The translations under genes and the position numbers were made by a program. Shown here piece by piece: positions 628 to 63,966 of a stretch of 64,000 nt of DNA (the first letter of the stretch is position 1; each line of letters begins with the position of its first letter). The stretch covers positions 9,362,001 through 9,426,000 of the forward strand of contig CM119382.1 of the NCBI GenBank assembly GCA_051294905.1, in the 5' to 3' direction. The DNA comes from Botryllus schlosseri (taxonomy: Eukaryota). The notes beneath the pieces are model-generated. The model saw only the letters and a list, made by a program, of their open reading frames with translations, had not been told where the DNA came from and searched no databases.

Positions 628-930
628 ATTGATAGATATCTTGTTGCTTGAATTCAGAACAACACCACCTTTCTCCCACATCACTTTCGGTGCCGGATTT
701 CCCTTGAAATACGCTTTCAACGTAACCGAATGCCCAGATCGCACGGATATCACATCTCTGTAGTCGGCGTCGACAAACACACGTGCCGGAATAACGTCGT
801 CCTTCACCAAGACGGCATCGGTAGATTCTGACGGCATGCTTACACTACCCGCTGCGTTTACGGCGACAACGCGAAACTCGTATTCGTTGTTTTCCGTGAG
901 ATTGCCAATATCATATTCGCAATGGATAAC
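628..930 (-). CDS. TTN: titin exon 103 (Fn79 C, Ig80 N)
   Basis: VIHCEYDI..KISIN; strong AAT|GTAAGT donor; next exon not identified in window. Confidence 0.82.
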
Positions 931-3900: not shown

Positions 3901-6900
3901 TGCACGAGCCCTCAGGTTAAGAACCCCAGTGGCAAAAGAGAAATTACCTGAGATAGATGTGTTGACACGGCTTGTCTCCTTCAGTATATCATCGTTACGA
4001 CTGAAGCTGACCACTGGCAATGGAGTACCAGAGAATGGAAATTCGATTGTGACGTCACTTCCGACCTTACAAGCAAGAAGAATGAATATTACGATTCACA
4101 ATGCACTTTTGTATTGACATGAAAATAACATGCATTTTTACAGGCTTTTACGTCGGAAAGCAAGCACATATAATAATCGAGTGGAATTAAAGAGTAATGG
4201 CATACAGACAGAGCATTGTCTTACCTTCTGAACTATCGAACCACCAATTTTGCTTGTGTTGATATGTGGCGGGATCAGTACTTCTTTGATATTGACCATG
4301 TCACTTTCGCATGGATGTGATAGCCCGATTTCATTCTAATTCCGTGAAGAGCATATAAAATTACAGAACACACATAAGAACTAACTGTACATTCTCATAT
4401 AACTATCCACTGACCTGTGCCCGAACTCTGAACACATAATCTTTTCCAGTGGGCAGTTTGTTCACAACGTACCTCGTTGATTTAGTGGAACCCGCCACTT
4501 TCCACGCCTCAAACCCGCCTTTCTGTGACATTTCCACCACGTATCCTGTTATTTGATTACTACCATCATGCCCCGGCTTGGTCCACGACACAGTGGCCGA
4601 CGAGTCTGTGACATTTGTCACTGCAATCGATTCCGGGGTCCCGGGGACTTCTGAAATTCGGACGGCTTGCTTCGTCTCGCAAGGAGCACCGAGTCCGTAC
4701 TCGTTCTCAGCCATGACTCGGAATAAGTACGAAGCCCCTTCCGATAGCCCTTCTATTTTTGCTGACGTACGGTATGTAGCGACAGTTGCGATTTGCCACG
4801 ATTTCCTGGTGGCTTCACGTTTTTCGACGACACACTGTGATATCACAGAGCCTCCGTTGTTAGCAGGCGGTTCCCAAGAGATTGTGACGTGTTGCAGCGT
4901 GATATCTTTTACTGAAATGGCGAGACAAGGTCCAGGTGTGTCCAATATTTTCACATTTATCGAAACCGAAGTGGAGCCTGAATCGTTGGTGGCTGTAACT
5001 GAGTACCTGAGTACAAGAACAGAAGTCAAAACCTGATCAGTTATTGAAGTATTACTGTTAAAAACCCGATTTCAAAATAATTGTATGTTATTCGATATTG
5101 ATTCTGTCCCGTCCAAATTCCAGGAATCCTAATCCAAAATCTACTAAATGCTCAACTTCAAGTAAAATTCGGCATGGCAAAGTGCATTACCAACTGCACC
5201 AACATCATTCCAATGGATACATGAATATCCCAGATCATCCATCCATAAGTAATTCATATCAGAACTGAATCCAAATACATGGTCTATCAATACTCATAAT
5301 ACAAGTTTATAAGACGCGAAGTCACACTTACGTTCCGGTATCATTTCTTGAAGAATCTTTTATAACAAGTGATGTGGTGTCATCAAAATTTTCAACCATC
5401 GCCGACTCATTGATATCTCCTTCCACTTTTTCCCATTTAACCTCGGGAACAGGACGTCCGCGTACTGATCCCGCCAATTTAACCTGCGACCCCGCTCTAA
5501 CAGTAACATACTGTCCGACTTCGGAATCAATATCGATCTCAGGCCCGATTTTAATATCTCTCGGTTTGCAAGATTCGGAGAGTTGCAAAGGGTCTCCGAT
5601 TCCAGCCTCGTTGATAGCTGAAATTCTGATGCTATAATCGATGTCGTGCAGTCCTTCCAAGGTGTGCACTAAGCCTTTGACGCCTTGTGGCGGAGTGACG
5701 GCTACCCAGTCTTGTTCCGCGTCTTCGGTGGAAACATCCAATATCTCAATTACATACCCGGTTACCTGTTGCATGAAGATAAAAAATTATTATGACAAAA
5801 CAAAATCATAACTTGGCCTATTTTGCGGTATTGGACATACTTTAAAGACAATTATAGATCATTTCTTAACAATAGATGATACGATCAGAAAATAGGTTCA
5901 TTTCATTGAATTTACATGCCTCACCACAGCGGGATTATTGAATTTTATCAATGACACCATGAAACAGCAGTTAGCCTATAATAGTATTAAAATGAACAAC
6001 AGTGACAATTTCTAAATTCACTATTGCCGCTGTTGTAGACTCATCAGCTAAAAGTTCATACCATCCTAAGACGACATCATATCACACAAGCAGAAAAGCA
6101 ATCATGGATAATTGAAATTGTTAATACACAAAGCATATTCCAGTTACCTCACTGCCGCCATCCGACAGCGGTGGCGTCCATTGCAGAGTGATGGAATTAT
6201 TGGTGGTGTCGAGAACTTTGATCGATTTTGGTTCGTCAGGTGTGAAAATTTCGTCGAGCGCTTTCACTCTATCGGATATTTCGCTGGGCTTTCCGGTACC
6301 CTCAACATTTTCCGCAAATACCTGAAAGGTCAAATGGAAATATTATCTGCCGATATGGTTGGAACAGTCACGGACTCAACTGGTAGTAGAATTAATTTGT
6401 GTAAAATCAACCACATGTAATGTACAGGTAGAAATATTAATTTCAAAGGCAAGGAGAAACTATTTAAAAAAAAGCAAGGAAGGGTCGGAAAATTACTGAA
6501 GAAAGTATCCTTAAATAGAGCACTCTGCATCCAGAGGTGGTCAGTAATGAAATACTTCTACTATTTTGTGTACTGAAGAAAGCTTTGCCTACTTTCACCG
6601 CGTTCTCAAGTAGTTGCGACATATGACTAATTCCACTGCTACCTGAAAGTTTTCAGTTTTTTAGGCAGAACTAGGTGATATTTATATTTTTTTACTTTGT
6701 ACGAAATGACTGTTTCTACTGGCCCTTGAGTAAAAATGTAAATTGTTACTAATACTTCTACTTGAGTACCAATAATGAATACTTTGACATTCCATATTTT
6801 TATAATACAAATCGTAAGATACTTTCTACATAAAAAAATGTAAGAATTGAATCATTTAGCTTTAGAAATTGTCAAACTGGAAGTATTATACAGCCAAACT

Positions 6901-54900: not shown

Positions 54901-57900
54901 ATCACACGGCAATTTGTGGATATGTTGCGGTACATCTTTTAGCTTGCTTACTATTAGCGTAGATATTTCCTTTTGAGGAGGATCTTGTATAACGAGAATG
55001 AACATCATTATCAGGTAGGAAAATGTTATCGAACACACGAGTTAAACTCTTGGAAAATATACATAAGATTAGACACTAAGGTTCCATAGTGTTCATTAAC
55101 TTCATCTTCAAAACATGAGTTCACTTACAAACGGGATCTCGTGTGGTGAGGGGCAGACCAGATTCCAGCGGGGTACCAACGCCAATGATGTTTTCAGCAG
55201 ATACGCGGAACATGTAGGATTCGTTTTCAATCAGACCCTGTAGAGATAATGTATCTTGTGTTGACCAGTGACCACAAATCAATAATTTCAACACATTGAG
55301 TTTAAAAATTTTTAAATACATATCGTCACGTTTTAAAGCCGACAATTGCGACTAAATATTTAGTAATTCATCACAGCACATCAATACAGACAGCAAACCT
55401 GCACTACAGCCGATGTCCTAGTGGCAATCATCGGCACTTTGGTCCAAGAGCGTCTCGAAGACTCCCGCTTCTCAATGACAAAATTTGTAATGGTGCAACC
55501 GCCATCGTCTTCCGGTAGATTCCATGATAACGTCACAGAGTGCTTAGTGATGTCATAACAGGACAGCGGCCCGACACAAGAACCCGGCACGTCTAGATTT
55601 GAGAAGAAATAAACAGGCATATTGAATTAAGAAACGTGGATTGATATGTTACTGAGATGCTACAAAAAAACATTTTGTTTCTGAACAACGATAACTTACC
55701 GTGAACTGTAATGTTAGCGTCAACTGAGGCATCACCGGCAAGGTTCTTCACAGTGAGACCATAATTTCCATTGTGGGATCTTAGACAGTTTCTAATGATC
55801 AATCCCTCACTATGCAAGCGCGCTTCTTCTGGTAAGTTGTCTCCTAAAAGGGGTTGTAGTGGAAATGAGATGTATGAACATATCAGCATATTGATTTATA
55901 AACATATTCCAACCATTGATTGCTCTTTGGTAAAACATTTCATTATTAGATCTTAACAAAACTCGTAATCAACATCTCGTAATCACCTTCATTTGAAAGG
56001 CATAAGATGCATGGATAAATGTAGTCAAATCGAGAAAACCACATAATAATTATATCAGAGAAATCACATGTTGAAAAATATCATCACATTCTCTTACCGT
56101 CTTTTGTCCAGACAATCTCTGGTGTCGGACAACCCGTGATTACAGTATTTATCCTGATGGTTTCACCGGCTCTTACCACGAGCGAATTCTTTTTGACTGG
56201 TGGCAAAAACTTGGCTTGGGGTAGTTCTGTCGACAATATCAGGCTTAGCAAGGCAATCACGGCGCTGACCAAATCAACGATTACCTAACGTTATACCAAC
56301 GCATACGGCGCTGGGAAGAACTCCCGGTATCCCGCGGCCTGCAGAATTGATTGCGGACACACGAAACAGGTAAGACTTTCCCTCGCACAGGTCTCCGACA
56401 GTGATTTTCTTCCAGCGATGCTCATGCCCGCTGACTTTAATCCAATCCTCCTCACCTGTGTGTCGCATTTGACGGATTACCTTCTATTATTATCATTTGA
56501 AGTACATAAAATCTTATAGCTAGAATAAATGTGTTATGGTAGTGCACATTGATTCACACAATATGTGAGTTGCTATTCTCTCAAAGCTGCAAGAGACTTG
56601 ATGACTAACTGGCTCTTTTGGTGTAGAAAGTCCATTGCTGCCCATATTTTATTCAGCATTTCATGTTTCACTTTGCTATTCATTGTCATTGTCACTGACT
56701 TAATTGAGAAGTAAAATTCCACCCAGCAGAGGATGTTAGTAACGAATTAATTCTATTTAACCACTAAGAAGCAGGAGTGCTAATAAGGTAAAAGTTATTC
56801 CTGGTCGATTTCAAAGCCTTGTCGCTAGATTGGATGGACCTTCTGGTATACCAAGCAATTTATAACCAGTGATATTGATACTAAATTAACGAAATTTGAG
56901 TCAAAGCATATTCCAAACTATCAGTAGAGAAGCCATAATGTGGAGTAATTGAGTACTAGCTCAGTATGAACCTTTCTTTTTAGTCAGCATGTTATTAGAT
57001 AACGGTAGCGTCCGCATCTGAAGAGCAGATCGCATTTTGCCTAATAGTGAGCACCCCTGATCTATAGAAACGGAATAAATGCACACGCCTGATCCACAAT
57101 CTTGAGAAATGGTCCGAACAACACAGAAACATTAATACTAAAATCGAATTCCTGGAGCAAACAGTATCTTTTACCTAAAATTGATGCAAATCTTACGCTA
57201 CCTTCAAGCTGCTTTTCCACGAAATAGCTTGAAATTTTGGAACCTCCATCATCTTCGGGCGCTGTCCACTCTAGAGTGACCGAAGTCTTCCCAACTTCGG
57301 TCACAACAGGAACGGGAGCACCGGGACAGTTAACGGCCAGCACTGCAAACACCGGCAAACTCGTCTGGCTGAAATCTCCCTGACCGACTTGATTGACGGC
57401 AGCCACTCGAAAAACATATTCCTGCCCCTCTTGCAGACAGCTGGCCCGGAATTGCGTGCCGAAGATTTTTTCCGTTGTTGCTTTTCTCCAGCTTCTATTT
57501 AAGCGCGACCTCTTCTCCAAAATGTAAGATGTGACGATGGCGCCGCCATTTTCTTCGGGCGGGTCCCAGTATACTGTCATGGAATCTCGGGTGGCGCCTT
57601 TTATCTGTGGCCTGTCGGGACGGCCGGGACGAGTCCACGGCTCTTTCGCTGCCATTGGCGGGCTCAAAAGCCACTCGCTCGAGCCGTAGTCATTCACGGC
57701 TCTGGAAAATTCATTATTTGCAGATTAGAAAATAGTAATTTCTGGTAGATGTTTGAAAACAGCATAAGTTAATCAGCCCATGTGATAAATTCCCTGTACA
57801 TACATTTCTCTAATATACGTGAGTCAGTTAAAGTCAGTTGAATCATGGACAAATCCTATTCCCCTAAATGGATTTTGTCGTCAACATTGTTCATTTATGA

Positions 57901-60900
57901 AATATTTTGTCACTACTCGAATATTAATCTCAATACTGCTGTTCGCAACACGGCTGCTCAAATCTTTAAAAGCTTCTACAAACTGAACGTTGGACTAGTC
58001 ACAACAAGTAATTCAAACGCTACTCAATTCATTCTTGCTTTCTGGACAACATTCATTGCAATATAATATATTCCACCCAAAGAATCTTGTGTGTTCCATA
58101 TCTAGAATTACCAGTACAATAACAAGAATATAAACTGAGAATAAAATGAAAATGAATTCGGCAAAGAAACTGACGTAACTGAAATTATTCTTGCCTCAAT
58201 GCAGCATAATTTATTGAACACAAAAACTTTTCCAGTACCCCATATCGGGTGTCAACGGCAGTCACAATAGCAAGCATATGCAAGGATATGCAAATGAAAA
58301 CCAATTTGGTATAGTACAACATAACAATGTGATTTTGAAAATATGGCTAGAGAAAATAACATTGCTACATCACACTCCGCCAAATTGATTTTCATTAGAA
58401 TCGCTTTGAATATGCTGCTAAATCTTCAAGTAAAAAAAAAATTTAGTATCGTTAGCCACTTATTCAACAGAGGTTAGTCATTGTTGATACCCAACTATAG
58501 AAATAACAATTTCCAGGAAAAAGAATATACTGGGCCCAGTTTGATCTAAAAAGCTGATAACTATGGAGTAGAACCAGAAGTCGCCTAAAACCACTTTGAG
58601 GCAGTAGAGCAAGTGGGGAAAACAACTTGAGTACCCTGTTATACTTCTTTACTGACCGCTAGGTTTATTCAAAAAGAACTAGTGAAGACACAGGAGTTCG
58701 AAAAATTTGACGCGATTCCAACCCGTAGAAGAGATGTTCTTTGAGTTTTTCATGAATAATTCCGTGATTACCCACATGGACTTCGCTTCTACCAGTTGGT
58801 AAACATCGTTTTTTTGACAACTCAATAATTTCAAGGGTTTGACAGTGAAAATTTTATAAATTTTGTTTCAATTTTTTCATAATAAATGCAAAATATTCCC
58901 CTTCTTATACCTTGACATCTACCATTTGGAATTGAGCCAAATTTTCTGTGCAACGTTTTTTCACCCAACCTAACAATTCAGCTATTCAATTTATTCTGTA
59001 CAAAATAACCACATATTCCGCACCTTATTCGATACACGTACTCCTTTCCGGCTTTCAGATCAGTGGCGCACACAGATAAATCCTTGACTTCGGCCACAAC
59101 GTGCCAAGAGTCCCGGTCAGTCTCGCGTTTCTCCACGGCGTAATGTTTCACCCGGCATCCGCCGTCGTCCAGCGTGGGGTTCCAGAAAAACGACATGAGA
59201 CTCGAAGAAATTCTCGTGAACTCGAACGGATTGCAAGGTGGGCCCGGGACGCCTGAATATTGCACGAGATGTTACAATGTGGGCAGACCAATTCGTACCT
59301 ACTACCTTCTTCAAGTCAGGGTTGTAATGACTCGAGTCATGACTCGACTCAAGTCTCAATTTTTTATTGACTCGACTTGACTCGAGACTTTTTTTTTAAT
59401 GGAAAATTACTCCACTCGAATCAATTTGTGTATTGCAGGGCACATCTTAACGACTAGCCCCAAATTACTAATACCACTGCAGATAGGTGCTATTTTTTTG
59501 AAATACCATTTAATTACCATGATATACATTCGTTATGACAATTTACCTCATAAACACGGTGGAAAGAAATCCCCTAACTACTTTGTAATTTACAAGATCC
59601 TAATTCTACAAAGTGATAAGTTTTACCAGAAAAACTGGTAACTAAAAGTGGACATAGGGAAAAAACATAACACTTTAAGTACTCTGTAAAAGTTGGACTA
59701 CTTTGTTACTGACCACCCTCCGTACGGACGTACCTATTACTTCCACCTTTATGTCTTTCGTGGCTTGTCCCGTTGAATTTTTGACGATAACGGTGTAAAC
59801 GCCCGTGTCTGATCTTGCCGCATTCGAAATCAATAGCTCCGTGGTTGTCGACGTCGATTTGATAGAAGATCTTGAAAAAGTTGATAGCACACTCAGGCGA
59901 GAGTAAAGAAGATTAATTGGGTGCCGGCCGCAATCAGCTTGAATAGGCCTTTAGAAGTACGGAACTTCAATATTCCAACAAACAATATGTTCATTGTTCA
60001 ATGCTCATATAACGAAATTTATAGTGCTCGAAGCTTTTCGACTGACCGGGTCACACCAGAGACCTGAGCAGTAACACTGGTATCCGTGACTTCCCCGCTT
60101 GGTGCTTACCATCACCATAGCATGGTGGGATGGTGCAAGACTTCAACAGGCTTACAATTCTGTATCTGCACCTTCCATTTCCAGCTGCATATGCGCATCA
60201 CGCACTCATGGTATGCATACGCACAGACAGGGTGAACATCAAGGACAAAAACATACAACGTCCTATTTGTCCTATTCCTACACCAAAATATTGTTAGAAA
60301 TATAGTTCCTAACTGTAAAACACACCCTAGCACATTTGAATAATATATTCACACACCTATCCGAGTTCTTCAATTCTTTATCAAATCGGAACCATCCAAT
60401 TAACGGCTTCGGCGTGCCTAAATACGTTGCCAAAATCGCTATATTATTCCCCGATTCAACCGACTGAAAATCAACGGCGTCGATAGTTGGAAACACTGTA
60501 AAAAACGTGTCATGGATATCAAAAGTTTCGCTTTGAGGAATATCGATTTACCAATGTCATCTTTGCACTCGACTGGGCCGACAACGTTCGAAGGAGGGCT
60601 CATGCCAACGATGTTCACTGACAACACGCGGAAACACGGTCTGTACCCCTTTTTTATCGTTTTCACGGTATGCTCCAACGAGGTAGTTTCATCGCATCTG
60701 GATTATGAAAAAATTTGGAAATGGAAAATTTGGGATTGGAAAAGTCCTTTATAATGAGCGGGGAGAGAATTGATCAACAAGGAGATTAAATAAACATAGA
60801 TTTTCACAACAAATAACATATATTCTACGGCAAGCTTTCAATAGATTCTCATCAGGAATGTATGTGGCCTGAATACGACAAACCACTTTCGAAATATAGA

Positions 60901-63900
60901 CATAATTTTGTCGGTGCGACGTAATATTGACAAGTAATCAGACTAGTGAACTGTAAATAACAACACACGGTCATGGTACAACGACGACAATTTCGGCTGT
61001 AACAACTTGACACTAACGAAAAATTCCAAGGCAATAGAAATGTTCTTTCTGGCGACAAAGTGTCGTTTGATGCAGTTTTGCGATAGTTGATCCATAATTT
61101 CAAGTTTAAATGAAAAAGAGAGCGACCACAACTACAGAAAATTGGTTGTTATCATAGGCATTACAATATTTGGTATATTCAGGATGTTTCTCGAGCTGTT
61201 GTCGAATGGTAGATTTCTCATACTATACGACTTTAAATCATATAATTTTAATGTCGCACAGCTTACTATTTCACAGTACTTCACAATTCCAGTTTTCCAA
61301 TTTGCTTTACAAATGTATTAGTAGTTTCCCACATTTAGCAGCGTTTCCGAGTGTTTGAAGTTTACTGAGCATAAATTTAGGTGGATTTCAACCAATTGAA
61401 AAACCTCAAGAGTCAAATTCCAGGTTCAACTCCACAAAGAATGATTTACAATGATTTACATTTACAATGATGGTGACACACGACAATTTTTGGCTGGCGA
61501 ATTTTCTAATTTTAAGAACATTCTTATTTGAATGCTATTGACTTGGTTATTGATACCTTTGAGCATAGTATTCACCAATACCACAAAAAATTAATGTGAT
61601 ACAATATCGCACTGAGGTAAGTTGTGTAAAATTGATCGATACAGTTGGTAACAACATAACGTTACTTACTTAATCCATTCTGCCTTTTCTCCGTCGACGA
61701 GCATTTCCACGAGATAAGAAGTAGCCGGATGACATCCGTATAGCTCAGGAGCGGTCCATTTCAAAGATACGCTAGAAGCCGACACTTCGGATATGCGCAA
61801 TCGCGACGGGGCGAAGGGCGTGCAAGCCGGGTCATCGATGTAGACAGGTTTTGTGGTAGATGCCCATGGCCCTTGTCCGATGGCATTGACAGCACATATG
61901 CGAAAGTCATATTCATCACCTTGCAAAAGCCCCACCACCACGCACTCCGTAATGGAAAGAGTGGTTTCCACCTAAATACCAGCAAGGAGTCAGAAAGTAG
62001 TGTTTTAGTCTTGAGACTTGAAGAATCAGGATTGCGTCTCCCATCTAAATTTTTACCTGGTGGAAATTTATGTCAAAATATTACTGTATCATTCACATTT
62101 AGATGAACACTAGAAATAGCAAGTACCATGAGTAAAAAATGAGCCATATTATACCTGATTCACGTATAATTGTACAATTGGGCTGTTCAGAAAAATTTTT
62201 AAGTACTGCTGGCCTAAGCATTGAATCGTTAACTTGCCTATAAAACGCAAAAAATCAAATTCAGATCAATTTCAACCAGTAAAGTCTGAGTCATAACTAG
62301 GCCAAGTTTTTGTTGCAGTTAAATCCGTGGAAAGTTGCATTTATTTTTGACAAAAGTTGCAGTAAAAAGTTGCATTTCTTTTTCCACAAAAGTTACACTA
62401 AAAGACCACATTTTGCTCGGTTGACTAAAAAAAAAAGGTCAACTTTCCGGCTCAGCTCCCGAAATACCTGTAAGAGCGTTACTTCAGTGGTGATTTACGG
62501 TGTTTCAGTCGAATTTGGCCGTGAATTTCACCAAAATCAAAAATACTTTCATGAAAAATCGAAAAAGTTGCAAAATGTTGCATAAAGTTGCATGAAAAAA
62601 AATGGCTAAAAGTTGCAAAAAGATGCACTAGAAGATTCCTTCAAACAGCTTAAAACAGCATTCTACATATCTTACGAGTATTTAGGAAGCTGCCGGAAGC
62701 TGTAAAAAGTTGCAAGAGAAGTTGCGAAAGTTGCAAAAACTTGCCCTAGTCATAACAGTCTAGAAATTTGATAATTTTTTGAAATAATAGTATTTACGGT
62801 AGCAAATACCGTCTGGATAAATATATCCGGTAAATTGGCTAACAGTGCTTGGATAGTTATGTTAAAGAAACGGTCATACAACTCAAAAACAAAATACTTT
62901 CATCGTCGCAATAGACAACTGTATCAATTAATACCTTTCTCCATGCTCTGCCGTCGATTTTCCTTTTTTCAACTATATAATTCCGTATTTTCGACCCGCC
63001 AGCGTTATCAGGATGCCTCCAGTGCAGCGTGACTGATCTTTTCGTCACGTGCGACACTTCCAAACTGGCCGGGGCGCCCGGCGTGTCGATCACTTGCACT
63101 CTGCAGGAACAGAATCTCATCCCCGCCACGTTGGTGGACACGACGGTGTACGTCCCGCTGTGAACTCGGTTGCAGTTTTCCACAGTCACAAAATATCGGC
63201 CGTCCTTCACGTTGATCAAAACTGATTCGCTAGCGATAAGCGCGTCTTGGTCTTTTTTCCAGGATATCTGAAAAGCATTATGGTAAATCCCATCGGAACA
63301 GGCACGGGTATACAAAATAACATTTCTGTTCAAATGCAGGTGAAAGTAAGGATTTTAACACATCAAAACTACTAAAGTAGAAGTAGAAAATGAATGGCTT
63401 GAAAACAGCTCAAGTAAGTAATTTCAAACTCGAATCCGACTCTAGTGATTCGACTTTCCTTGAGACTTTTTTCAAATTGTAAAATGACTCGACTGACTCG
63501 AGTAAATTTGTGCATTGACTCTATCCAAGTCATAACTCGAGACTAGAACAGCCAAGATCGACATTTCATTGTAACTTCACAGAATAGTTAAGTCACCACA
63601 TTATTGGTCTTTTGTCTATCAGTCCTGAAACTTGGAAAATAGGGCCAGGAACTGTTAAGACTGAGGAGAATTACACTATTATGGATGTGGGACATTCTAT
63701 GTCACTGGAGCAGAGTCGAACGAAGTCGGTCGAAACGGATTACACTCAAAACTCCGACATACATAATGACTTGGATTCGGACTCGAGTCTTAACACTATG
63801 ATTGTGAGTTGGTTACAACCCTGGAACGAGTTGTATTAAGAATGTGACACCGTACTCACCTCAGGTGTCGGCGTACCCGAAATGTCTGCAGACACGCGTA

Positions 63901-63966
63901 ACGTCGCCCCAGCTCTTACTTCCAGATAATTTCTCAGCCCGACATCCATGTGGATTGAAGGCGGAT
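628..63966 (-). CDS. TTN: Titin/connectin orthologue, A-band segment (partial gene; 103 exons, 80 Ig/FN3 domains, D-zone to C-zone transition)
   Basis: Minus-strand ORF fragments carry FN3 motifs (W..P..DGG..I..Y.VEK, L.EG.EY.FRV.A.N..G) and I-set Ig motifs (G.P.P.V.W, D.G.Y...A.N..G). Exons join via GT/GC-AG with matching phases into one open frame. The order Ig-Fn2-Ig-Fn3 x4 then Ig-Fn2-Ig-Fn3-Ig-Fn3 matches vertebrate titin A-band super-repeats. Confidence 0.93.
1597..1808 (-). CDS. TTN: titin exon 102 (Fn78 end, Fn79 N)
   Basis: GLSKKSKM..ANFNK; phase 1-0. Confidence 0.9.
2711..3373 (-). CDS. TTN: titin exon 101 (Ig76 C, Fn77, Fn78)
   Basis: DDVAKLTL..AENIA; phase 1-1. Confidence 0.93.
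3426..3929. mobile_element. degenerate Charlie-like MITE
   Basis: Ends CAAGGGTTCCTAAAT / GGTTAAGAACCCCAG with internal GGACCC motifs; no TSD seen. Confidence 0.4.
3948..4065 (-). CDS. TTN: titin exon 100 (Ig76 middle)
   Basis: VGSDVTIE..NTSIS; phase 0-1. Confidence 0.87.
4225..4335 (-). CDS. TTN: titin exon 99 (Fn75 end, Ig76 start)
   Basis: NEIGLSHP..SIVQK; phase 0-0. Confidence 0.87.
4415..5006 (-). CDS. TTN: titin exon 98 (Ig73 end, Fn74, Fn75)
   Basis: YSVTATND..RVRAQ; phase 2-0. Confidence 0.92.
5332..5765 (-). CDS. TTN: titin exon 97 (Fn72 C, Ig73)
   Basis: VTGYVIEI..NDTGT; phase 0-2. Confidence 0.92.
6148..6321 (-). CDS. TTN: titin exon 96 (Fn71 end, Fn72 N)
   Basis: VFAENVEG..DGGSE; phase 0-0. 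Confidence 0.9.
6532..6790 (+). repeat. family E interspersed repeat (CAGAGGTGGTCAGTAA terminus)
   Basis: Terminal 20-mer recurs reverse-complemented at 8331-8353 and partly near 59705-59720; TACTT/GAGTA-rich interior. Confidence 0.5.
6990..7290 (-). CDS. TTN: titin exon 95 (Fn70 end, Fn71)
   Basis: VRAENKFG..EYEFR; phase 2-0. Confidence 0.92.
7779..8303 (+). mobile_element. family B MITE (GACTCGAGTC-rich)
   Basis: TIRs CAGGGTTGTAA / TTACATCCCTG; many TGACTCGAGTC palindromes; homologous to 9397-9899. Confidence 0.8.
8370..8661 (-). CDS. TTN: titin exon 94 (Ig69 end, Fn70)
   Basis: GQYILRAC..DYVFR; phase 1-2. Confidence 0.9.
8847..8956 (+). repeat. family A solo arm
   Basis: TTGTTGATATACAATGTTCTTTCCAATTCTCTACTAGTT..TTCAATATGAATATACCATTCAATTG then TA. 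Confidence 0.8.
9397..9899 (+). mobile_element. family B MITE with 8-bp TSD (hAT-type)
   Basis: TIRs CAGGGCTGTAA / TTACAACCTTG; flanks ATATTTAC / ATATATAC (7 of 8 match). Confidence 0.82.
10013..10288 (-). CDS. TTN: titin exon 93 (Fn68 end, Ig69)
   Basis: GSISDPSD..SRYDT; phase 1-1. Confidence 0.9.
10491..10703. mobile_element. family A MITE, paired inverted arms
   Basis: CATTGAATAGTATATTCATATTGAAATGAACCCGAATATTTTC and its reverse complement ~100 nt downstream. Confidence 0.75.
11060..11453 (-). CDS. TTN: titin exon 92 (Fn67 C, Fn68)
   Basis: KSSKVTIP..AKNMI; phase 0-1. Confidence 0.92.
11516..11955. mobile_element. hAT-type MITE (family D)
   Basis: TIR C(G/A)GGCA(T/C)GGTTATTTTT at both ends; perfect 8-bp TSD CTGTTAAC. 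Confidence 0.85.
12129..12434 (-). CDS. TTN: titin exon 91 (Fn66 C, Fn67 N)
   Basis: VWMNVSQD..STIWK; phase 0-0. Confidence 0.92.
12993..13225 (-). CDS. TTN: titin exon 90 (Ig65 C, Fn66 N)
   Basis: DCNVDDGG..EAVSQ; phase 1-0. Confidence 0.9.
13417..13618 (-). CDS. TTN: titin exon 89 (Ig65 N)
   Basis: VTAPEISE..LLTVK; phase 0-1. Confidence 0.88.
13681..13868 (-). CDS. TTN: titin exon 88 (Fn64 C)
   Basis: GYLVEFRE..LVKEE; phase 1-0. Confidence 0.9.
14094..14304 (-). CDS. TTN: titin exon 87 (Fn63 C, Fn64 N)
   Basis: VYNLNEGL..GSKVT; phase 0-1. Confidence 0.9.
14882..15146 (-). CDS. TTN: titin exon 86 (Ig62 C, Fn63 N)
   Basis: SDSGRYSI..QNTFK; phase 2-0. Confidence 0.92.
15243..15305 (-). 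repeat. family A solo arm fragment
   Basis: CGTCAGAAACTAGTAGAGAATTGGAAAGAACATTGTATATCAGCAATCG. Confidence 0.75.
15583..15737 (-). CDS. TTN: titin exon 85 (Ig62 middle)
   Basis: IKAGTTAK..NGANR; phase 0-2. Confidence 0.9.
15870..15993 (-). CDS. TTN: titin exon 84 (Fn61 end, Ig62 start)
   Basis: ISALNEAG..HKALK; phase 2-0. Confidence 0.88.
16058..16298 (-). CDS. TTN: titin exon 83 (Fn61, atypical)
   Basis: EPPIDPKV..EYRIR; phase 1-2. Confidence 0.88.
16481..17267. mobile_element. hAT/Charlie-like non-autonomous element
   Basis: Ends CAAGGATGTCAAAC / GTTTGACACCCCTG; flanks TGCTACAT / TACTACAC (6 of 8 match). Confidence 0.7.
17309..17484 (-). CDS. TTN: titin exon 82 (Fn60 C)
   Basis: HSNRWLLA..PAYPP; phase 2-1. 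Confidence 0.9.
17545..18339 (-). CDS. TTN: titin exon 81 (Fn57 end, Ig58, Fn59, Fn60 N)
   Basis: VSAKNAAG..QHRYK; phase 2-2. Confidence 0.93.
18623..18748 (+). repeat. family A solo arm
   Basis: Near-consensus arm CATATTTTGTGATACGATTGTTGATATAC..GAATATACTAC. Confidence 0.85.
18896..19016 (-). CDS. TTN: titin exon 80 (Fn57 middle)
   Basis: GYVIERRE..EYIFR; phase 1-2. Confidence 0.9.
19078..19288 (-). CDS. TTN: titin exon 79 (Fn56 C, Fn57 N), GC donor
   Basis: IFGLTESL..GSKII; phase 0-1, donor ATAG|GCACGA. Confidence 0.85.
19825..19840. repeat. (AG)8 microsatellite
   Basis: Direct inspection. Confidence 0.8.
19931..20028 (-). CDS. TTN: titin exon 78 (Fn56 middle)
   Basis: GSPIVGYH..SNFVK; phase 1-0. 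Confidence 0.88.
20094..20295 (-). CDS. TTN: titin exon 77 (Fn55 C, Fn56 N)
   Basis: VTQLGRDQ..PTNDG; phase 0-1. Confidence 0.9.
20893..21090 (-). CDS. TTN: titin exon 76 (Ig54 end, Fn55 N)
   Basis: VIVFDRPS..RTTLK; phase 0-0. Confidence 0.9.
21151..21335 (-). CDS. TTN: titin exon 75 (Ig54)
   Basis: GMPQPTVE..SSPVK; phase 1-0. Confidence 0.9.
21864..22075 (-). CDS. TTN: titin exon 74 (Fn53 C, Ig54 N)
   Basis: GEVKDLNE..VLPVS; phase 2-1. Confidence 0.9.
22135..22307 (-). CDS. TTN: titin exon 73 (Fn53 N)
   Basis: TPGPPQSV..TPNLT; phase 0-2. Confidence 0.88.
23148..24028 (-). CDS. TTN: titin exon 72 (Fn50, Ig51, Fn52; longest exon, 881 nt)
   Basis: DVPEPPGK..EPDFKLDADLRQTVTVRAGG..VRASE; phase 1-0. 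Confidence 0.93.
24806..24957 (-). CDS. TTN: titin exon 71 (Fn49 C)
   Basis: CNRVKITD..IRDPI; phase 2-1. Confidence 0.9.
25016..25166 (-). CDS. TTN: titin exon 70 (Fn49 N)
   Basis: STPGEPLE..LKWMR; phase 1-2. Confidence 0.9.
25226..25370 (-). CDS. TTN: titin exon 69 (Fn48 C)
   Basis: VGESGIKC..AEDKI; phase 0-1. Confidence 0.88.
25440..25757 (-). mobile_element. family B MITE, truncated, reverse orientation
   Basis: Reverse-complement match to the 7779 copy (e.g. CTTGGAAAATAGGGCCAGAA, CTTGTGACTTGG). Confidence 0.7.
25763..25945. repeat. degenerate telomere-like (TTAGGG/CCCTAA) tract
   Basis: GGGTTAGGG..GGTTAGGTTAAGGGTTAG followed by repeated AACCCTAA/AACCTCAA units. Confidence 0.6.
26066..26220 (-). 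CDS. TTN: titin exon 68 (Fn48 N)
   Basis: DKPDVISG..LMWTM; phase 1-0. Confidence 0.9.
26282..26461 (-). CDS. TTN: titin exon 67 (Ig47 C)
   Basis: VSWCLDEK..KIGVL; phase 1-1. Confidence 0.88.
26533..26640 (-). CDS. TTN: titin exon 66 (Ig47 N)
   Basis: EPPDVVID..KPAPK; phase 1-1. Confidence 0.88.
27103..27220 (-). CDS. TTN: titin exon 65 (Fn46 C)
   Basis: AVNLNPGG..CQEEY; phase 0-1. Confidence 0.88.
27285..27463 (-). CDS. TTN: titin exon 64 (Fn46 N), GC donor
   Basis: DPPTEVSA..DTEYK; phase 1-0, donor AAG|GCACTC. Confidence 0.85.
27559..27681 (-). CDS. TTN: titin exon 63 (Fn45 C)
   Basis: DTVIEGLS..ALDQI; phase 1-1. Confidence 0.9.
   Translation of the reverse strand, partial: TRSSKDCRKDCNINFESKLSIRLGCLFRRKQLCPYLHLTR
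27746..27919 (-). CDS. TTN: titin exon 62 (Fn45 N)
   Basis: KVPYAPAI..ETPRN; phase 1-1. Confidence 0.9.
28065..28271 (-). CDS. TTN: titin exon 61 (Fn44 C)
   Basis: GSQISNYI..AKYPF; phase 1-1. Confidence 0.9.
28593..28707 (+). repeat. family A solo arm, diverged
   Basis: CATATTTAGTGATATGATTGTTGATATACAAAG..GACGAGTGTCAGCC..TTTCAATATGAATATAG. Confidence 0.75.
28743..29127 (-). CDS. TTN: titin exon 60 (Ig43, Fn44 N)
   Basis: LIEPQFDL..PKEDG; phase 0-1. Confidence 0.9.
29187..29291 (-). CDS. TTN: titin exon 59 (Fn42 C)
   Basis: LTGLREDM..TAMEQ; phase 0-0 using donor CAA|GTAGGT. Confidence 0.87.
29800..30341 (-). CDS. TTN: titin exon 58 (Ig40 C, Fn41, Fn42 N)
   Basis: DQYMMCVA..KALSYK; phase 1-0. 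Confidence 0.92.
30863..31075 (-). CDS. TTN: titin exon 57 (Ig40 N)
   Basis: VSPSFELD..SRDDT; phase 1-1. Confidence 0.9.
31246..31405. mobile_element. family B MITE, internally deleted
   Basis: Perfect TIRs CAGGGTTGTAA / TTACAACCCTG around GACTC/GAGTC motifs. Confidence 0.75.
31543..31839 (-). CDS. TTN: titin exon 56 (Fn39, whole domain)
   Basis: YPPSSPRN..PKEVL; phase 1-1. Confidence 0.92.
32117..32310 (-). mobile_element. putative tRNA-derived SINE, copy 1
   Basis: Minus-strand B-box-like GGGTTCAATCCCCGG followed by ~180 nt homologous to 60030-60228; A-box not seen. Confidence 0.6.
32550..32852 (-). CDS. TTN: titin exon 55 (Fn38, whole domain)
   Basis: NIPDPPES..SQDPK; phase 1-1. Confidence 0.92.
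32984..33560. mobile_element. family A long-TIR MITE (full-length, ~130-bp inverted arms)
   Basis: Left arm 32984-33115 is the reverse complement of right arm 33432-33560; TA flanks at both ends. Confidence 0.8.
33243..33420. mobile_element. small hAT-type MITE nested in a family A element
   Basis: TIRs CATTGCTCCCTCTAA / TTAAAGGGAACATTG; flanks CCGGTGAC / CCGATGGC; empty site CCGGTGAC at 35483-35490. Confidence 0.8.
33682..33857 (-). CDS. TTN: titin exon 54 (Fn37 C)
   Basis: RESSNVTW..VKSPY; phase 2-1. Confidence 0.9.
33995..34210 (-). CDS. TTN: titin exon 53 (Ig36 C, Fn37 N)
   Basis: LCRKVDAG..NYVIEK; phase 2-2. Confidence 0.9.
34271..34472 (-). CDS. TTN: titin exon 52 (Ig36 N)
   Basis: VAPSIMLD..STLSKR; phase 1-2. 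Confidence 0.88.
34871..35007 (-). CDS. TTN: titin exon 51 (Fn35 C)
   Basis: NSDNSVTL..IKQEL; phase 2-1. Confidence 0.88.
35066..35222 (-). CDS. TTN: titin exon 50 (Fn35 N)
   Basis: DPPGKPEV..RVVSTR; phase 1-2. Confidence 0.9.
35327..35538. mobile_element. family A MITE, paired arms, right arm truncated
   Basis: Full left arm, spacer containing CATGCCGGTGAC, partial right arm. Confidence 0.75.
35802..35943 (-). CDS. TTN: titin exon 49 (Fn34 C)
   Basis: SLVKRREF..AREQC; phase 0-1. Confidence 0.88.
36054..36214 (-). CDS. TTN: titin exon 48 (Fn34 N)
   Basis: ATPVAPVD..WTKINK; phase 1-0. Confidence 0.9.
36279..36426 (-). CDS. TTN: titin exon 47 (Fn33 C)
   Basis: VLNGNVSR..ATHPF; phase 0-1. 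Confidence 0.9.
36485..36636 (-). CDS. TTN: titin exon 46 (Fn33 N)
   Basis: SHPSIPVGP..NHQGFK; phase 1-0. Confidence 0.9.
37121..37571. mobile_element. hAT/Charlie-like MITE
   Basis: Ends CAGTGGTTCTCA / TGAGAACCGCTC; flanks TACTAAAG / TACTAGAG (7 of 8 match). Confidence 0.8.
37600..37875 (-). CDS. TTN: titin exon 45 (Ig32)
   Basis: ESPTVKLP..QVEVL; phase 1-1. Confidence 0.9.
37950..38118 (-). CDS. TTN: titin exon 44 (Fn31 C)
   Basis: SESMDDW..VQEQI; phase 0-1. Confidence 0.88.
38699..38823 (-). CDS. TTN: titin exon 43 (Fn31 N)
   Basis: TEPGPVNK..SVEYK; phase 1-0. Confidence 0.88.
38882..39181 (-). CDS. TTN: titin exon 42 (Fn30, whole domain)
   Basis: DTPSPVKN..ARQPI; phase 1-1. Confidence 0.92.
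39240..39396 (-). CDS. TTN: titin exon 41 (Ig29 C)
   Basis: GSVLLLRA..NVKVL; phase 0-1. Confidence 0.85.
40035..40425 (-). CDS. TTN: titin exon 40 (Fn28, Ig29 N; D/C-zone boundary)
   Basis: STVTLTWD..IKWTKQ; phase 2-0. Confidence 0.9.
40839..41006 (-). CDS. TTN: titin exon 39 (Fn27 C, Fn28 start)
   Basis: IRVNQLSY..VTEITG; phase 2-2. Confidence 0.88.
41317..41500 (-). CDS. TTN: titin exon 38 (Fn27 N)
   Basis: NIPSQLAKP..PCKDT; phase 1-2. Confidence 0.88.
41568..41724 (-). CDS. TTN: titin exon 37 (Fn26 C)
   Basis: IWSVVTNA..AKSCI; phase 0-1. Confidence 0.9.
41785..41927 (-). CDS. TTN: titin exon 36 (Fn26 N)
   Basis: DKPGPCAG..CEATKM; phase 1-0. Confidence 0.9.
42056..42257 (-). CDS. TTN: titin exon 35 (Ig25 C)
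   Basis: ITGQPVPE..VNVTVI; phase 0-1. Confidence 0.9.
42616..42811 (-). CDS. TTN: titin exon 34 (Fn24 C, Ig25 N)
   Basis: LTDLEENC..ISISAC; phase 2-0. Confidence 0.88.
42869..43050 (-). CDS. TTN: titin exon 33 (Fn24 N)
   Basis: KPQPPQDI..LDCFYK; phase 0-2. Confidence 0.88.
43668..43801 (-). CDS. TTN: titin exon 32 (Fn23 C)
   Basis: GTKKMIRVP..VDPAK; phase 1-0. Confidence 0.85.
43861..44040 (-). CDS. TTN: titin exon 31 (Fn23 N)
   Basis: DKPGQCRN..TIVGPG; phase 1-1. Confidence 0.88.
44424..44791 (-). CDS. TTN: titin exon 30 (Fn21 end, Ig22)
   Basis: FRVLAVND..VEVCVL; phase 2-1. Confidence 0.9.
45228..45468 (-). CDS. TTN: titin exon 29 (Fn21)
   Basis: AVPSCPVN..EDFEYR; phase 1-2. Confidence 0.9.
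45553..45749 (-). CDS. TTN: titin exon 28 (Fn20 C)
   Basis: YIVERFD..ISRPL; phase 2-1. Confidence 0.9.
45930..46468. mobile_element. degenerate Charlie-like MITE
   Basis: Left end TAGTGGTTCCCAAACT; right end GCGGCACACTAATCTGCCACGGCGCACAGTTTTGGAATTACAG; TSD not clear. Confidence 0.5.
46633..46738 (-). CDS. TTN: titin exon 27 (Fn20 N)
   Basis: DIPSAPGKP..GSAVTG; phase 1-2. Confidence 0.9.
46803..46959 (-). CDS. TTN: titin exon 26 (Fn19 C)
   Basis: SWGLVSL..AKHAF; phase 0-1. Confidence 0.9.
47065..47455. mobile_element. degenerate Charlie-like MITE
   Basis: Ends CAATGCTTCCCAAAGT / ATATGGAAACCACTG; TSD not clear. Confidence 0.45.
47626..47768 (-). CDS. TTN: titin exon 25 (Fn19 N)
   Basis: DRPSAPTGP..KDTDTE; phase 1-0. 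Confidence 0.9.
47826..48068 (-). CDS. TTN: titin exon 24 (Ig18)
   Basis: VRSGESV..YITVL; phase 1-1. Confidence 0.9.
48427..48579 (-). CDS. TTN: titin exon 23 (Fn17 C, Ig18 start)
   Basis: NLKTDSLY..LEGLR; phase 1-1. Confidence 0.87.
48749..48844 (-). CDS. TTN: titin exon 22 (Fn17 middle)
   Basis: GYCVAYAE..HCNIT; phase 1-1. Confidence 0.82.
48907..49196 (-). CDS. TTN: titin exon 21 (Fn16 C, Fn17 N)
   Basis: IEKCSVES..GGSPIT; phase 2-1. Confidence 0.9.
49252..49448 (-). CDS. TTN: titin exon 20 (Ig15 C, Fn16 N)
   Basis: CRADSGKY..VISHYK; phase 0-2. Confidence 0.9.
49754..49959 (-). CDS. TTN: titin exon 19 (Ig15 N)
   Basis: NYPEIHP..VLKNA; phase 1-0. Confidence 0.88.
50542..50989 (-). CDS. 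TTN: titin exon 18 (Fn13 C, Fn14)
   Basis: DLINETRF..IKVND; phase 0-1. Confidence 0.92.
51901..52229 (-). CDS. TTN: titin exon 17 (Fn12 C, Fn13 N)
   Basis: DASRMMW..WARVTK; phase 1-0. Confidence 0.9.
52741..52866 (-). CDS. TTN: titin exon 16 (Fn12 N)
   Basis: DKPYPPQD..YVIEKR; phase 1-1. Confidence 0.9.
52926..53055 (-). CDS. TTN: titin exon 15 (Ig11 C)
   Basis: IKSTAESS..HLLIV; phase 0-1. Confidence 0.88.
53085..53193. mobile_element. family B fragment
   Basis: GACTTGGACTCGAGCC..CTCGAGTC..TTACAACTCT inside a 187-nt intron. Confidence 0.55.
53243..53700 (-). CDS. TTN: titin exon 14 (Fn10, Ig11 N)
   Basis: STPGRPEE..ESRFK; phase 1-0. Confidence 0.92.
53858..54085. mobile_element. family A MITE, paired inverted arms
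   Basis: CAATTGAATAGTAC.. left arm; ..CAATGTTCTTTCCAATTCTC..AATATTCGGG right arm. Confidence 0.75.
54317..54744 (+). mobile_element. hAT-type MITE, family C copy 1
   Basis: TIRs TAGGGCAAGTTTTTG / CAAAAACTTGCCCTA; perfect 8-bp TSD GTTATGAC on both sides; no ORF. Confidence 0.9.
55129..55237 (-). CDS. TTN: titin exon 13 (Fn9 C)
   Basis: GLIENESY..TRDPV; phase 0-1. Confidence 0.9.
55399..55592 (-). CDS. TTN: titin exon 12 (Fn9 N)
   Basis: DVPGSCVGP..RTSAVVQ; phase 1-0. Confidence 0.9.
55700..55843 (-). CDS. TTN: titin exon 11 (Ig8 C)
   Basis: GDNLPEE..ANITVH; phase 1-1. Confidence 0.85.
56098..56226 (-). CDS. TTN: titin exon 10 (Ig8 N)
   Basis: ELPQAKF..IVWTKD; phase 1-1. Confidence 0.88.
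56285..56455 (-). CDS. TTN: titin exon 9 (Fn7 C); acceptor position uncertain
   Basis: GEEDWIKV..VCVGITL; preferred acceptor cacacag, alternative at 56483. Confidence 0.7.
57202..57701 (-). CDS. TTN: titin exon 8 (Fn5 end, Fn6, Fn7 N); donor position uncertain
   Basis: AVNDYGSSE..VEKQLE; preferred donor G|GTAGCG, alternatives give exon ends at 57197 or 57175. Confidence 0.7.
59024..59252 (-). CDS. TTN: titin exon 7 (Fn5)
   Basis: GVPGPPCNP..EYVYRIR; phase 1-2. Confidence 0.9.
59317..59435. mobile_element. family B fragment (one end)
   Basis: CAGGGTTGTAATGACTCGAGTCATGACTCGACTC..GACTCGACTTGACTCGAG. Confidence 0.7.
59734..59870 (-). CDS. TTN: titin exon 6 (Ig4 C)
   Basis: SSIKSTSTT..IKVEVI; phase 2-1. 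Confidence 0.88.
60030..60228 (+). mobile_element. putative tRNA-derived SINE, copy 2
   Basis: Shares AGACCTGA.CAGTAA..TGGTATC.GTG.CTTCC, TGCAAGACTT and ATCA.GCACTC.TGGTATGCATA.GCACAGA with copy 1. Confidence 0.6.
60357..60495 (-). CDS. TTN: titin exon 5 (Ig4 N)
   Basis: VFPTIDAV..ELKNSDR; phase 1-2. Confidence 0.87.
60552..60697 (-). CDS. TTN: titin exon 4 (Fn3 C)
   Basis: CDETTSLEH..ECKDDI; phase 2-1. Confidence 0.88.
61670..61971 (-). CDS. TTN: titin exon 3 (Fn2 C, Fn3 N)
   Basis: VETTLSITE..EKAEWIK; phase 0-2. Confidence 0.9.
62298..62748 (-). mobile_element. hAT-type MITE, family C copy 2 (inverted relative to copy 1)
   Basis: Reverse-complement homology to 54317-54744 along its length; perfect 8-bp TSD GTCATAAC. 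Confidence 0.9.
62935..63267 (-). CDS. TTN: titin exon 2 (Ig1 C-half, Fn2 N-half)
   Basis: ISWKKDQ..DGRAWRK; phase 0-0. Confidence 0.9.
63421..63823 (-). mobile_element. family B MITE, reverse orientation
   Basis: Ends TTACAACCCTG; internal CTTGGAAAATAGGGCCAGGAACTGTTAAGACTGAGG shared with the 25440 copy. Confidence 0.75.
63860..63966 (-). CDS. TTN: titin exon 1 of window (Ig1 N-half)
   Basis: DPPSIHMDVG..GTPTPE; AG acceptor, GTGAGT donor. Confidence 0.85.

What the first reader, a model, noticed from the sequence alone, without database searches (positions are those of the whole stretch)
628..63966. Vertebrate-style titin A-band architecture (D-zone 7-mers to C-zone 11-mers) in an apparently non-vertebrate genome
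Seen: the 80 domains parse with no leftover into 7-domain repeats at 63966-56285, 56226-50542, 49959-44710 and 44710-40165, then 11-domain repeats at 40165-31543, 31075-23725, 23725-15920, 15920-5550 and a partial one at 5550-628. Established: vertebrate titin has 7-domain D-zone and 11-domain C-zone super-repeats, the latter matching the thick-filament/MyBP-C periodicity, whereas twitchin and projectin repeat Fn-Fn-Ig only. Inference: this is a true titin orthologue from an invertebrate chordate that retains the thick-filament ruler design despite very divergent sequences.
Basis: partly seen in the sequence, partly recalled or inferred. Interest (0 to 1): 0.7.

Follow-up and report, generated by a model that had tools for sequence, protein, structure and literature searches.

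The report
Sea-squirt titin thick-filament ruler segment

Summary
The minus strand encodes 80 Ig/Fn3 domains that parse without remainder into four Ig-Fn-Fn-Ig-Fn-Fn-Fn blocks, four Ig-Fn-Fn-Ig-Fn-Fn-Fn-Ig-Fn-Fn-Fn blocks and eight domains of a fifth.

With 100 kb fetched on each side, the gene shows the full chordate titin layout:
- tandem I-band Ig domains
- an A/I junction of 11 Fn3 and 2 Ig
- six D-zone repeats (the window holds D3-D6)
- ten full C-zone repeats and a truncated eleventh
- Fn-Ig-Ig-Fn, then the kinase, then M-band Ig domains

C-zone domains match a vertebrate titin position for position: 70 of 80 Fn3 best hits fall on the same super-repeat position. The genome is a tunicate, closest to Styela clava among named sequences.

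It is not new in kind. Ascidian and amphioxus connectin with a vertebrate-type A-band were published in 2011-2012.

Two details may be new:
- Seven consecutive domains next to the kinase are missing relative to Styela, a Ciona-like ascidian and amphioxus.
- About 1.2 introns per domain break up a stretch that Ciona-like ascidians and vertebrates encode as single giant exons.

RNA reads gave no coverage, so expression is unshown. The scan had no earlier titin finding.

The parts
56310..63955 (-). D-zone super-repeat D3 (Ig-Fn-Fn-Ig-Fn-Fn-Fn), third of six in the gene
   Evidence: HMM hit chain; the numbering comes from the upstream flank, where D1 and D2 lie at window coordinates +77378 to +65094.
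50555..56197 (-). D-zone super-repeat D4
   Evidence: It is the one-to-one orthologue of repeat 1 of Ciona-like P0005: 54.9% identity, against about 32% to the other repeats.
44715..49945 (-). D-zone super-repeat D5
   Evidence: 47.9% identity to P0005 repeat 2. The lower bound is approximate: the tail of the seventh domain lies in open piece 44799-44413.
40191..44697 (-). D-zone super-repeat D6, last 7-domain repeat
   Evidence: 44.4% identity to P0005 repeat 3.
31559..40121 (-). C-zone super-repeat C1 (Ig-Fn-Fn-Ig-Fn-Fn-Fn-Ig-Fn-Fn-Fn)
   Evidence: position-specific matches to vertebrate P0001.
23739..31064 (-). C-zone super-repeat C2
   Evidence: A relative at 67% amino-acid identity (L033) has the same domain order and the same exon breaks.
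15936..23714 (-). C-zone super-repeat C3
   Evidence: The single exon 24038-23130 encodes C2p11-C3p1-C3p2 (Pfam fn3, I-set, fn3).
5568..15743 (-). C-zone super-repeat C4
628..5537 (-). First eight domains of C-zone super-repeat C5; the repeat is completed just beyond the window start
   Evidence: C5 is the one-to-one orthologue of repeat 1 of Ciona-like P0003 (47.1% identity).

Best explanation
The window is an internal segment of the single titin (connectin) gene of a tunicate, probably a stolidobranch ascidian. It is transcribed from the minus strand and covers D-zone super-repeats 3-6 and C-zone super-repeats 1-4 plus most of the fifth.

Inferred mechanism, from established knowledge of vertebrate titin: the Ig/Fn3 chain lies along the myosin thick filament. 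Each 11-domain C-zone repeat spans about 43 nm, one three-crown myosin period. It offers position-specific surfaces for myosin and for MyBP-C, so the protein acts as a template or ruler for the filament.

Shown here:
- the domain order and an open, spliceable frame
- the whole-gene layout up to the kinase and M-band Ig domains
- orthology of each super-repeat position with vertebrate titin

Inferred only: expression in muscle, binding to myosin or MyBP-C, and ruler function.
For: Domain identity:
- Domain order is established.
- The 17,816-codon chain has no stop and is bridged by 234 GT-AG introns.
- The same domain order and exon breaks occur in a relative at 67% amino-acid identity.

Whole-gene layout: 10 Ig, then FFF-I-FF-I-FFFFFF, then 6 x 7 domains, then 10 x 11 domains, then IFFIFFF, then F-I-I-F, then the kinase and at least four Ig domains. 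PMC12241362 describes the vertebrate layout as a junction of 2 Ig + 11 Fn3, 6 D repeats, 11 C repeats and a P-zone with kinase.

Kinase region:
- The kinase is Pfam Pkinase and scores best against titin kinase.
- The Ig-Ig-Fn piece is colinear with human A168-A170.

Position orthology with a vertebrate titin:
- 70 of 80 ascidian C-zone Fn3 domains have their best hit in vertebrate titin P0001 at the same super-repeat position.
- The reverse comparison gives 34 of 40.
- On a joint tree the position label needs 15 changes, against about 84 when shuffled (0 of 500 shuffles as low). For Ig the figures are 8 against 22.
- P0001 is a vertebrate titin: 60% identical to salmon titin and colinear with the human titin chain of 8G4L.

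A candidate partner exists. A MyBP-C-like gene in the same genome has a tri-helix-bundle motif (53 bits) followed by Ig domains and Fn-Fn-Ig-Fn-Ig.
Against: There is no expression evidence. Four bulk RNA-seq runs labelled with this species, sampled at 6-13%, put no reads on exons of 38000-43999.

The exon chain is computational. A few junctions deviate from the expected domain length by more than 6 residues, so small exons may be missed.

The eleventh C-zone repeat and the P-zone are not vertebrate-like: seven domains are absent.

Continuity with the upstream I-band Ig domains rests only on shared strand and order.
Confidence: 0.9

Rival explanations
1. It is a twitchin/projectin-type paralogue, the A-band-only giant kinase of invertebrates, and not the titin orthologue.
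For: Tunicates do carry such a gene. Ciona savignyi proteins labelled 'Titin' have the (IFF)n ... IFFIFFF-IIFFIIF-kinase pattern of twitchin. This genome has a second giant Ig/Fn3 locus on C5 at 3.65-3.78 Mb.
Against: The window's gene has six 7-mers and ten to eleven 11-mers, which Anopheles twitchin and the Ciona twitchin-type proteins lack. Its named best hits are vertebrate titins. Its kinase and Ig-Ig-Fn score higher against titin than against twitchin. Its C-zone positions are orthologous to those of vertebrate titin.
Confidence: 0.03
2. The 7- and 11-domain periodicities arose independently in this lineage, with no common descent from the vertebrate super-repeats.
For: Correspondence with amphioxus is weak. 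Only 34-45% of ascidian Fn3 best hits fall on the same position in Branchiostoma titin-like proteins, with p6/p10 and p5/p9 interchanged. Some remodelling of repeats has therefore occurred within chordates.
Against: Reciprocal same-position best hits with a vertebrate titin run at 85-87.5%, against 12.5% expected by chance. Mixed-species position clusters appear on the tree. The A/I junction formula and the number of D repeats are identical.
Confidence: 0.03
3. The locus is a decaying or unexpressed copy, for example a pseudogene, and not the working titin gene.
For: No RNA-seq reads were found on the exons tested. Seven domains are missing before the kinase.
Against: 17,816 codons stay open across 234 introns. 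Exon sequence and exon breaks are conserved in a relative at 67% identity. The missing block is an exact whole-domain, in-frame loss. No better titin locus turned up in the genome search.
Confidence: 0.04

Closest known systems
Vertebrate titin/connectin (TTN) A-band: D-zone and C-zone super-repeats
   Same: The A/I junction formula is the same (11 Fn3 + 2 Ig). There are six Ig-Fn-Fn-Ig-Fn-Fn-Fn repeats, followed by Ig-Fn-Fn-Ig-Fn-Fn-Fn-Ig-Fn-Fn-Fn repeats. Ig-Ig-Fn-kinase and M-band Ig domains follow. Individual super-repeat positions are orthologous.
   Different: Identity at matching positions is only about 40%. There are ten full C repeats plus a 7-domain eleventh, and a P-zone cut to Fn-Ig-Ig-Fn. 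That makes 121 domains between the D-zone and the kinase, against 128. The region is split into short exons, where vertebrates have an uninterrupted open frame of about 5,700 codons (P0001).
Ascidian connectin (Ciona; Hanashima et al. 2012, Methods 56:18) and unnamed Ciona-like ascidian titin proteins P0005, P0003, P0243, P0014
   Same: It is the same gene. Repeats are one-to-one orthologues: D4-D6 at 44-55% and C5-C9 at 46-50%, against 32-41% off the diagonal. The A/I junction matches that of C. savignyi H2YLF7.
   Different: The Ciona-like genomes encode D4-C1 and C4p11-C10p3 as single open frames of 3,571 and about 5,760 codons. Here the second stretch carries 67 introns. P0014 has a complete C11 and IIFFIIF, and this genome does not. 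I could not read the 2012 paper, so its domain counts are not compared.
Styela clava titin-like (UniParc UPI001939DF2B, P0287)
   Same: It is the closest named relative: 62% identity over Ig-Ig-Fn. C11 p1-p7, P-zone domains 4-7 and M1-M4 are orthologous domain by domain.
   Different: Styela has the seven domains (its residues 3814-4494) that are absent here. Its upstream gene model is irregular and probably mis-spliced.
Amphioxus connectin (Ohtsuka et al. 2011, J Mol Biol 409:415; Branchiostoma lanceolatum XP_066264227, XP_066263902)
   Same: It shows the D-to-C transition and C repeats followed by IIFFIIF-kinase.
   Different: Identity is lower (33-37%) and position correspondence weaker (34-60%).
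Twitchin / projectin / UNC-22
   Same: It is built of Ig and Fn3, and the module before the kinase resembles Ig-Ig-Fn-Fn-Ig-Ig-Fn.
   Different: Twitchin is mostly (Ig-Fn-Fn)n with two 7-mers and no 11-mers. Its kinase and Ig-Ig-Fn score lower against this gene.

Membership tests
Chordate titin/connectin | Chain of I-set Ig and Fn3 domains on one strand in one open frame | tested here: met
   Pfam hits; 80 domains in the window and 190 in 264 kb; no stop in 17,816 spliced codons.
Chordate titin/connectin | D-zone: six copies of Ig-Fn-Fn-Ig-Fn-Fn-Fn | tested here: met
   Six copies, four of them in the window; the vertebrate count is from PMC12241362.
Chordate titin/connectin | C-zone: eleven copies of Ig-Fn-Fn-Ig-Fn-Fn-Fn-Ig-Fn-Fn-Fn | tested here: inconclusive
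   There are ten full copies. The eleventh holds only positions 1-7, which are orthologous to Styela and Ciona-like C11 p1-p7. The pattern is met; the count is short by four domains.
Chordate titin/connectin | A/I junction of 11 Fn3 and 2 Ig preceded by tandem I-band Ig domains | tested here: met
   FFF-I-FF-I-FFFFFF, preceded by 10 Ig hits, in the upstream flank.
Chordate titin/connectin | P-zone Ig-Ig-Fn-Fn-Ig-Ig-Fn followed by a titin-type kinase and M-band Ig domains | tested here: inconclusive
   The kinase and at least four M-band Ig domains are present. The last four P-zone domains are present and colinear with human A168-A170. The first three are absent.
Chordate titin/connectin | Super-repeat positions orthologous to those of vertebrate titin | tested here: met
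   Same-position best hits are 87.5% and 85% in the two directions; on the tree the position label needs 15 changes against 84 when shuffled.
Chordate titin/connectin | Z-disc repeats, PEVK or other elastic I-band elements in the same transcript | not tested
   Only 100 kb upstream was fetched, and only Ig hits were looked for.
Chordate titin/connectin | Expressed in striated muscle and bound along the thick filament | not testable with these tools
   RNA runs gave no coverage; localisation needs experiments.
Twitchin/projectin | Long (Ig-Fn-Fn)n array without 11-domain repeats | tested here: not met
   Compare with Anopheles twitchin P0006 and the C. savignyi twitchin-type proteins.
Obscurin | Mostly Ig domains with RhoGEF and two kinases | tested here: not met
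   About two thirds of the domains are Fn3. There is one kinase, and it scores 106.7 bits against the obscurin kinase versus 152.7 against titin kinase. RhoGEF was not searched for.

The most novel reading that the evidence does not exclude
In this ascidian lineage the titin A-band has been remodelled in two ways that I did not find described.

(a) An exact in-frame loss of seven consecutive domains next to the kinase. These are C11 positions 8-11 plus the first Ig-Ig-Fn of the P-zone, all present in Styela clava, a Ciona-like ascidian and amphioxus. If titin is a ruler, this predicts roughly 28 nm less template per half filament.

(b) Break-up of the giant A-band exons, which Ciona-like ascidians and vertebrates keep as open frames of about 3,600 and 5,700 codons, into short exons. 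There are 67 introns in the second stretch, many inside domains, in all three phases, and at positions not shared between equivalent domains. That pattern points to large-scale intron gain and away from ancestral introns.
Probability: 0.5. Interest if true: 0.5.

Novelty: new member of a known kind. Interest (0 to 1): 0.3.

Why it matters
The main point is confirmatory. The thick-filament template design of titin, with six 7-domain and about eleven 11-domain repeats, predates the split of tunicates and vertebrates down to the identity of each position in the repeat. That agrees with published work on Ciona and amphioxus connectin.

The two lineage-specific changes could be useful if they hold.
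- A natural seven-domain deletion at the M-ward end of the C-zone is a comparative test of the ruler idea: measure thick-filament length here against Styela.
- The contrast between giant exons and about 1.2 introns per domain in orthologous sequence is a clean case for studying intron gain or loss in tunicates.

Tried and rejected
RNA evidence. One run search and one read-laying run were allowed. Four bulk RNA-seq runs of the same species label gave no reads on the exons of 38000-43999, only a short repeat at 38449-38481. This says nothing either way about expression in muscle.

Sources I could not reach.
- The full texts of Hanashima 2012 and Ohtsuka 2011 are not held.
- P0003 was too long for the contig look-up.
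- The species is only coded as 'organism A'.

Origin of the unnamed giant-exon proteins. I first considered that P0003, P0005 and P0014 might be vertebrate or cyclostome. I rejected this for four reasons:
- 38% identity to salmon titin
- GC3 of 0.30
- 67% identity to Ciona savignyi H2YLF7
- one-to-one repeat orthology with this ascidian

Introner hypothesis, that the introns are copies of one mobile element. All-against-all BLAST of 234 introns found three repeat families (25, 8 and 7 introns). The copies sit inside the introns in both orientations and do not span them. One intron outside the window is the exception. The hypothesis is not supported as a general explanation.

Repeat-by-repeat orthology with vertebrate P0001 showed no diagonal, because P0001's own repeats are 51-59% alike. 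I therefore cannot say which vertebrate repeat equals which ascidian repeat.

Full report
**What is in the window.** Open reading pieces on the minus strand are full of Fn3 and I-set Ig motifs. Pfam scans of the ten longest pieces gave fn3 and I-set hits, with E-values between 1e-28 and 1e-5. I built Fn3 and Ig HMMs from single-exon domains of the window and searched all stop-to-stop pieces of both strands. All 129 hits lay on the minus strand and none on the plus strand.

Chaining partial hits by their model coordinates gives 80 domains:
- four Ig-Fn-Fn-Ig-Fn-Fn-Fn blocks, 63955-40191
- four Ig-Fn-Fn-Ig-Fn-Fn-Fn-Ig-Fn-Fn-Fn blocks, 40121-5568
- eight domains of a fifth block, 5537-628

**Is it one intact gene?** Every pair of neighbouring coding pieces can be joined by a GT-AG intron that keeps the frame: 234 introns, median 302 nt. 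The spliced chain from the A/I junction to the M-band is 17,816 codons without a stop, with domains about 100 aa apart. The window holds 99 whole exons, median 194 nt.

RNA-seq gave no help. Four runs of the same species label put no reads on the exons tested. Support for the exon map comes instead from a relative. A 10.9-kb contig encoding a protein 67% identical (L033) shows the same fifteen domains in the same order, broken at the same model positions.

**Whole-gene context.** The window is G000:C12:9362001-9426000 in a 495.5-Mb assembly. With 100 kb fetched on each side, the domain string reads, 5' to 3':
- ten Ig
- FFF-I-FF-I-FFFFFF
- six 7-mers
- ten 11-mers
- IFFIFFF, then F-I-I-F
- a 3.3-kb stretch
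- four Ig

The 3.3-kb stretch encodes a protein kinase (Pfam Pkinase; best solved match titin kinase 1TKI at 152.7 bits, twitchin at 141.6). The Ig-Ig-Fn before it is colinear with human titin A168-A170 (2NZI, 243 bits).

PMC12241362 gives the vertebrate formula as an A-I segment of 2 Ig + 11 Fn3, six D repeats, eleven C repeats, a P-zone of 4 Ig + 3 Fn3 + kinase, and M-band Ig domains. The junction and D-zone match exactly. The window therefore holds D3-D6, C1-C4 and most of C5.

**Which organism?** Earlier scan notes called this a sea-squirt genome. I checked this three ways.
- The genome has a spliced GH6-like domain. By established knowledge, this occurs among animals only in the tunicate cellulose synthase.
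- The Ig-Ig-Fn piece is 62% identical to Styela clava titin-like and 51% to a Ciona-like protein.
- Unnamed proteins whose nearest named relative is Ciona savignyi (67%) are one-to-one orthologues of individual repeats here.

The named best hits of a window exon are vertebrate titins at only 37-44% identity. A tunicate, closer to Styela than to Ciona, fits all of this.

**Homology of the super-repeats.** Within the gene, Fn3 domains at the same C-zone position are 34.5-44.3% identical, against 29-36% for different positions.

I then compared them with P0001, an uninterrupted open frame of 5,743 codons. P0001 is 60% identical to salmon titin and colinear with the human titin chain in 8G4L.
- 70 of 80 ascidian Fn3 domains find their best match at the same position.
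- 34 of 40 vertebrate domains do so in the reverse direction.
- For Ig domains the figures are 20 of 30 and 13 of 15.
- On a joint tree the position label needs 15 changes, with a minimum of 7 and a shuffled mean of 84. For Ig it needs 8 against 22.

The 11-domain unit, with each position already distinct, was therefore present before tunicates and vertebrates split. Amphioxus proteins show the same pattern of domains but weaker position correspondence, 34-60%.

**What differs.** Domain-by-domain comparison of the last eleven domains before the kinase was made with Styela clava titin-like and with Ciona-like P0014.
- The first seven equal C11 positions 1-7: 44-64% identity to Styela, with the next-best match at or below 43%.
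- The last four equal P-zone domains 4-7: 48-72%.

The seven domains in between, Styela residues 3814-4494, have no orthologue-level match in the locus or elsewhere in the genome. The best matches are 42% to a second giant Ig/Fn3 gene on C5. Only about 125 bp separate the flanking exons, and there are no assembly gaps. This is an exact seven-domain loss in this lineage or in this assembly.

Second, the Ciona-like genomes encode D4-C1 and C4p11-C10p3 as single open frames of 3,571 and about 5,760 codons, much like the vertebrate giant exon. Here the second stretch has 67 introns. The introns fall into two classes:
- a phase-1 class at domain boundaries
- a larger class inside domains, in all phases, and mostly not shared between equivalent domains

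That pattern suggests gain, but the direction is not settled without amphioxus and Styela exon maps.

**How it probably works.** By analogy with vertebrate titin (established knowledge, not tested here), the chain lies along the thick filament. The 11-domain period matches the 43-nm myosin repeat and presents fixed surfaces to myosin and MyBP-C. A MyBP-C-like gene is present in this genome, with a tri-helix-bundle motif at 53 bits followed by Ig domains and Fn-Fn-Ig-Fn-Ig. PMC11203038 lists tunicate MYBPC orthologues.

**Novelty.** PMC12198301 states that urochordate and cephalochordate connectins have an I-band and an A-band region like vertebrates, citing Ohtsuka 2011, whose title says amphioxus has the vertebrate type of A-band region, and Hanashima 2012 on Ciona. 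RefSeq amphioxus proteins show the D-to-C transition. The finding is thus a correct reading of a known kind of gene in another species. The seven-domain loss and the exon fragmentation are the only parts I did not find described. I could not read the two key papers.

Noticed in passing
G000:C12, window coordinates about -45178 to -45304 (locus L007): Seven consecutive titin domains (C11 positions 8-11 and the first Ig-Ig-Fn of the P-zone) that Styela clava, a Ciona-like ascidian and amphioxus have are absent here. The flanking exons lie about 125 bp apart.
   Followed up: yes
window 628-63955 and flanks, compared with P0003, P0243 and P0005: Orthologous A-band sequence is encoded by single open frames of 3,571 and about 5,760 codons in Ciona-like ascidian genomes. 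Here it is split by about 1.2 introns per domain, many inside domains. Internal positions recur (model position 61 phase 0, 74 phase 2, 49) in Fn3 domains that are not equivalent.
   Followed up: partly
L003:1817-2133 (window coordinates -7867 to -8183): A 317-bp intron inside Ig domain C6p8 is about 90% one copy of a repeat that carries a tRNA-like T-arm motif (GGTTCAATCC). The repeat starts 2-3 bases after the donor site. Other copies lie within larger introns of the gene.
   Followed up: partly
introns across the gene, e.g. window 30584-30720: Three repeat families are shared by 25, 8 and 7 introns of the gene, in both orientations, and have further copies on other contigs.
   Followed up: partly
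G000:C5:3654399-3784219 (minus strand): A second giant Ig/Fn3 gene spans about 130 kb and gives the best genome-wide match (42%) to the P-zone Ig-Ig-Fn segment missing from titin. It may be the twitchin-type paralogue seen in Ciona savignyi.
   Followed up: no
G000:C2:10789183-10816724 (L029-L031); also C4:29146937 and C5:3830727: A MyBP-C-like gene has a tri-helix-bundle (THB) motif at 53 bits, followed by Ig domains and Fn-Fn-Ig-Fn-Ig. Two further THB hits above cut-off lie on other contigs.
   Followed up: partly
proteins P0227, P0228, P0231, P0282, P0283 (Ciona savignyi H2YLF1, H2YLE9, H2YFD1, H2YFC9, H2YFD0): The four database entries here named 'Titin' (H2YLF1, H2YLE9, H2YFD1, H2YFD0) and H2YFC9 (named only 'non-specific serine/threonine protein kinase') have the twitchin domain pattern, (IFF)n ... 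IIFFIIF-kinase. The true titin fragment of that species (H2YLF7) is labelled uncharacterised.
   Followed up: partly
proteins P0002 and P0004 (Branchiostoma lanceolatum titin-like): Amphioxus 11-domain repeats correspond only weakly to tunicate and vertebrate positions, with p6/p10 and p5/p9 interchanged. Amphioxus repeats may have been remodelled or homogenised separately.
   Followed up: partly
G000:C9:15068570-15068854 and 15025585-15025875: Two GH6-like domain matches lie about 43 kb apart, split over exons. This fits the tunicate cellulose synthase, possibly in two copies.
   Followed up: partly
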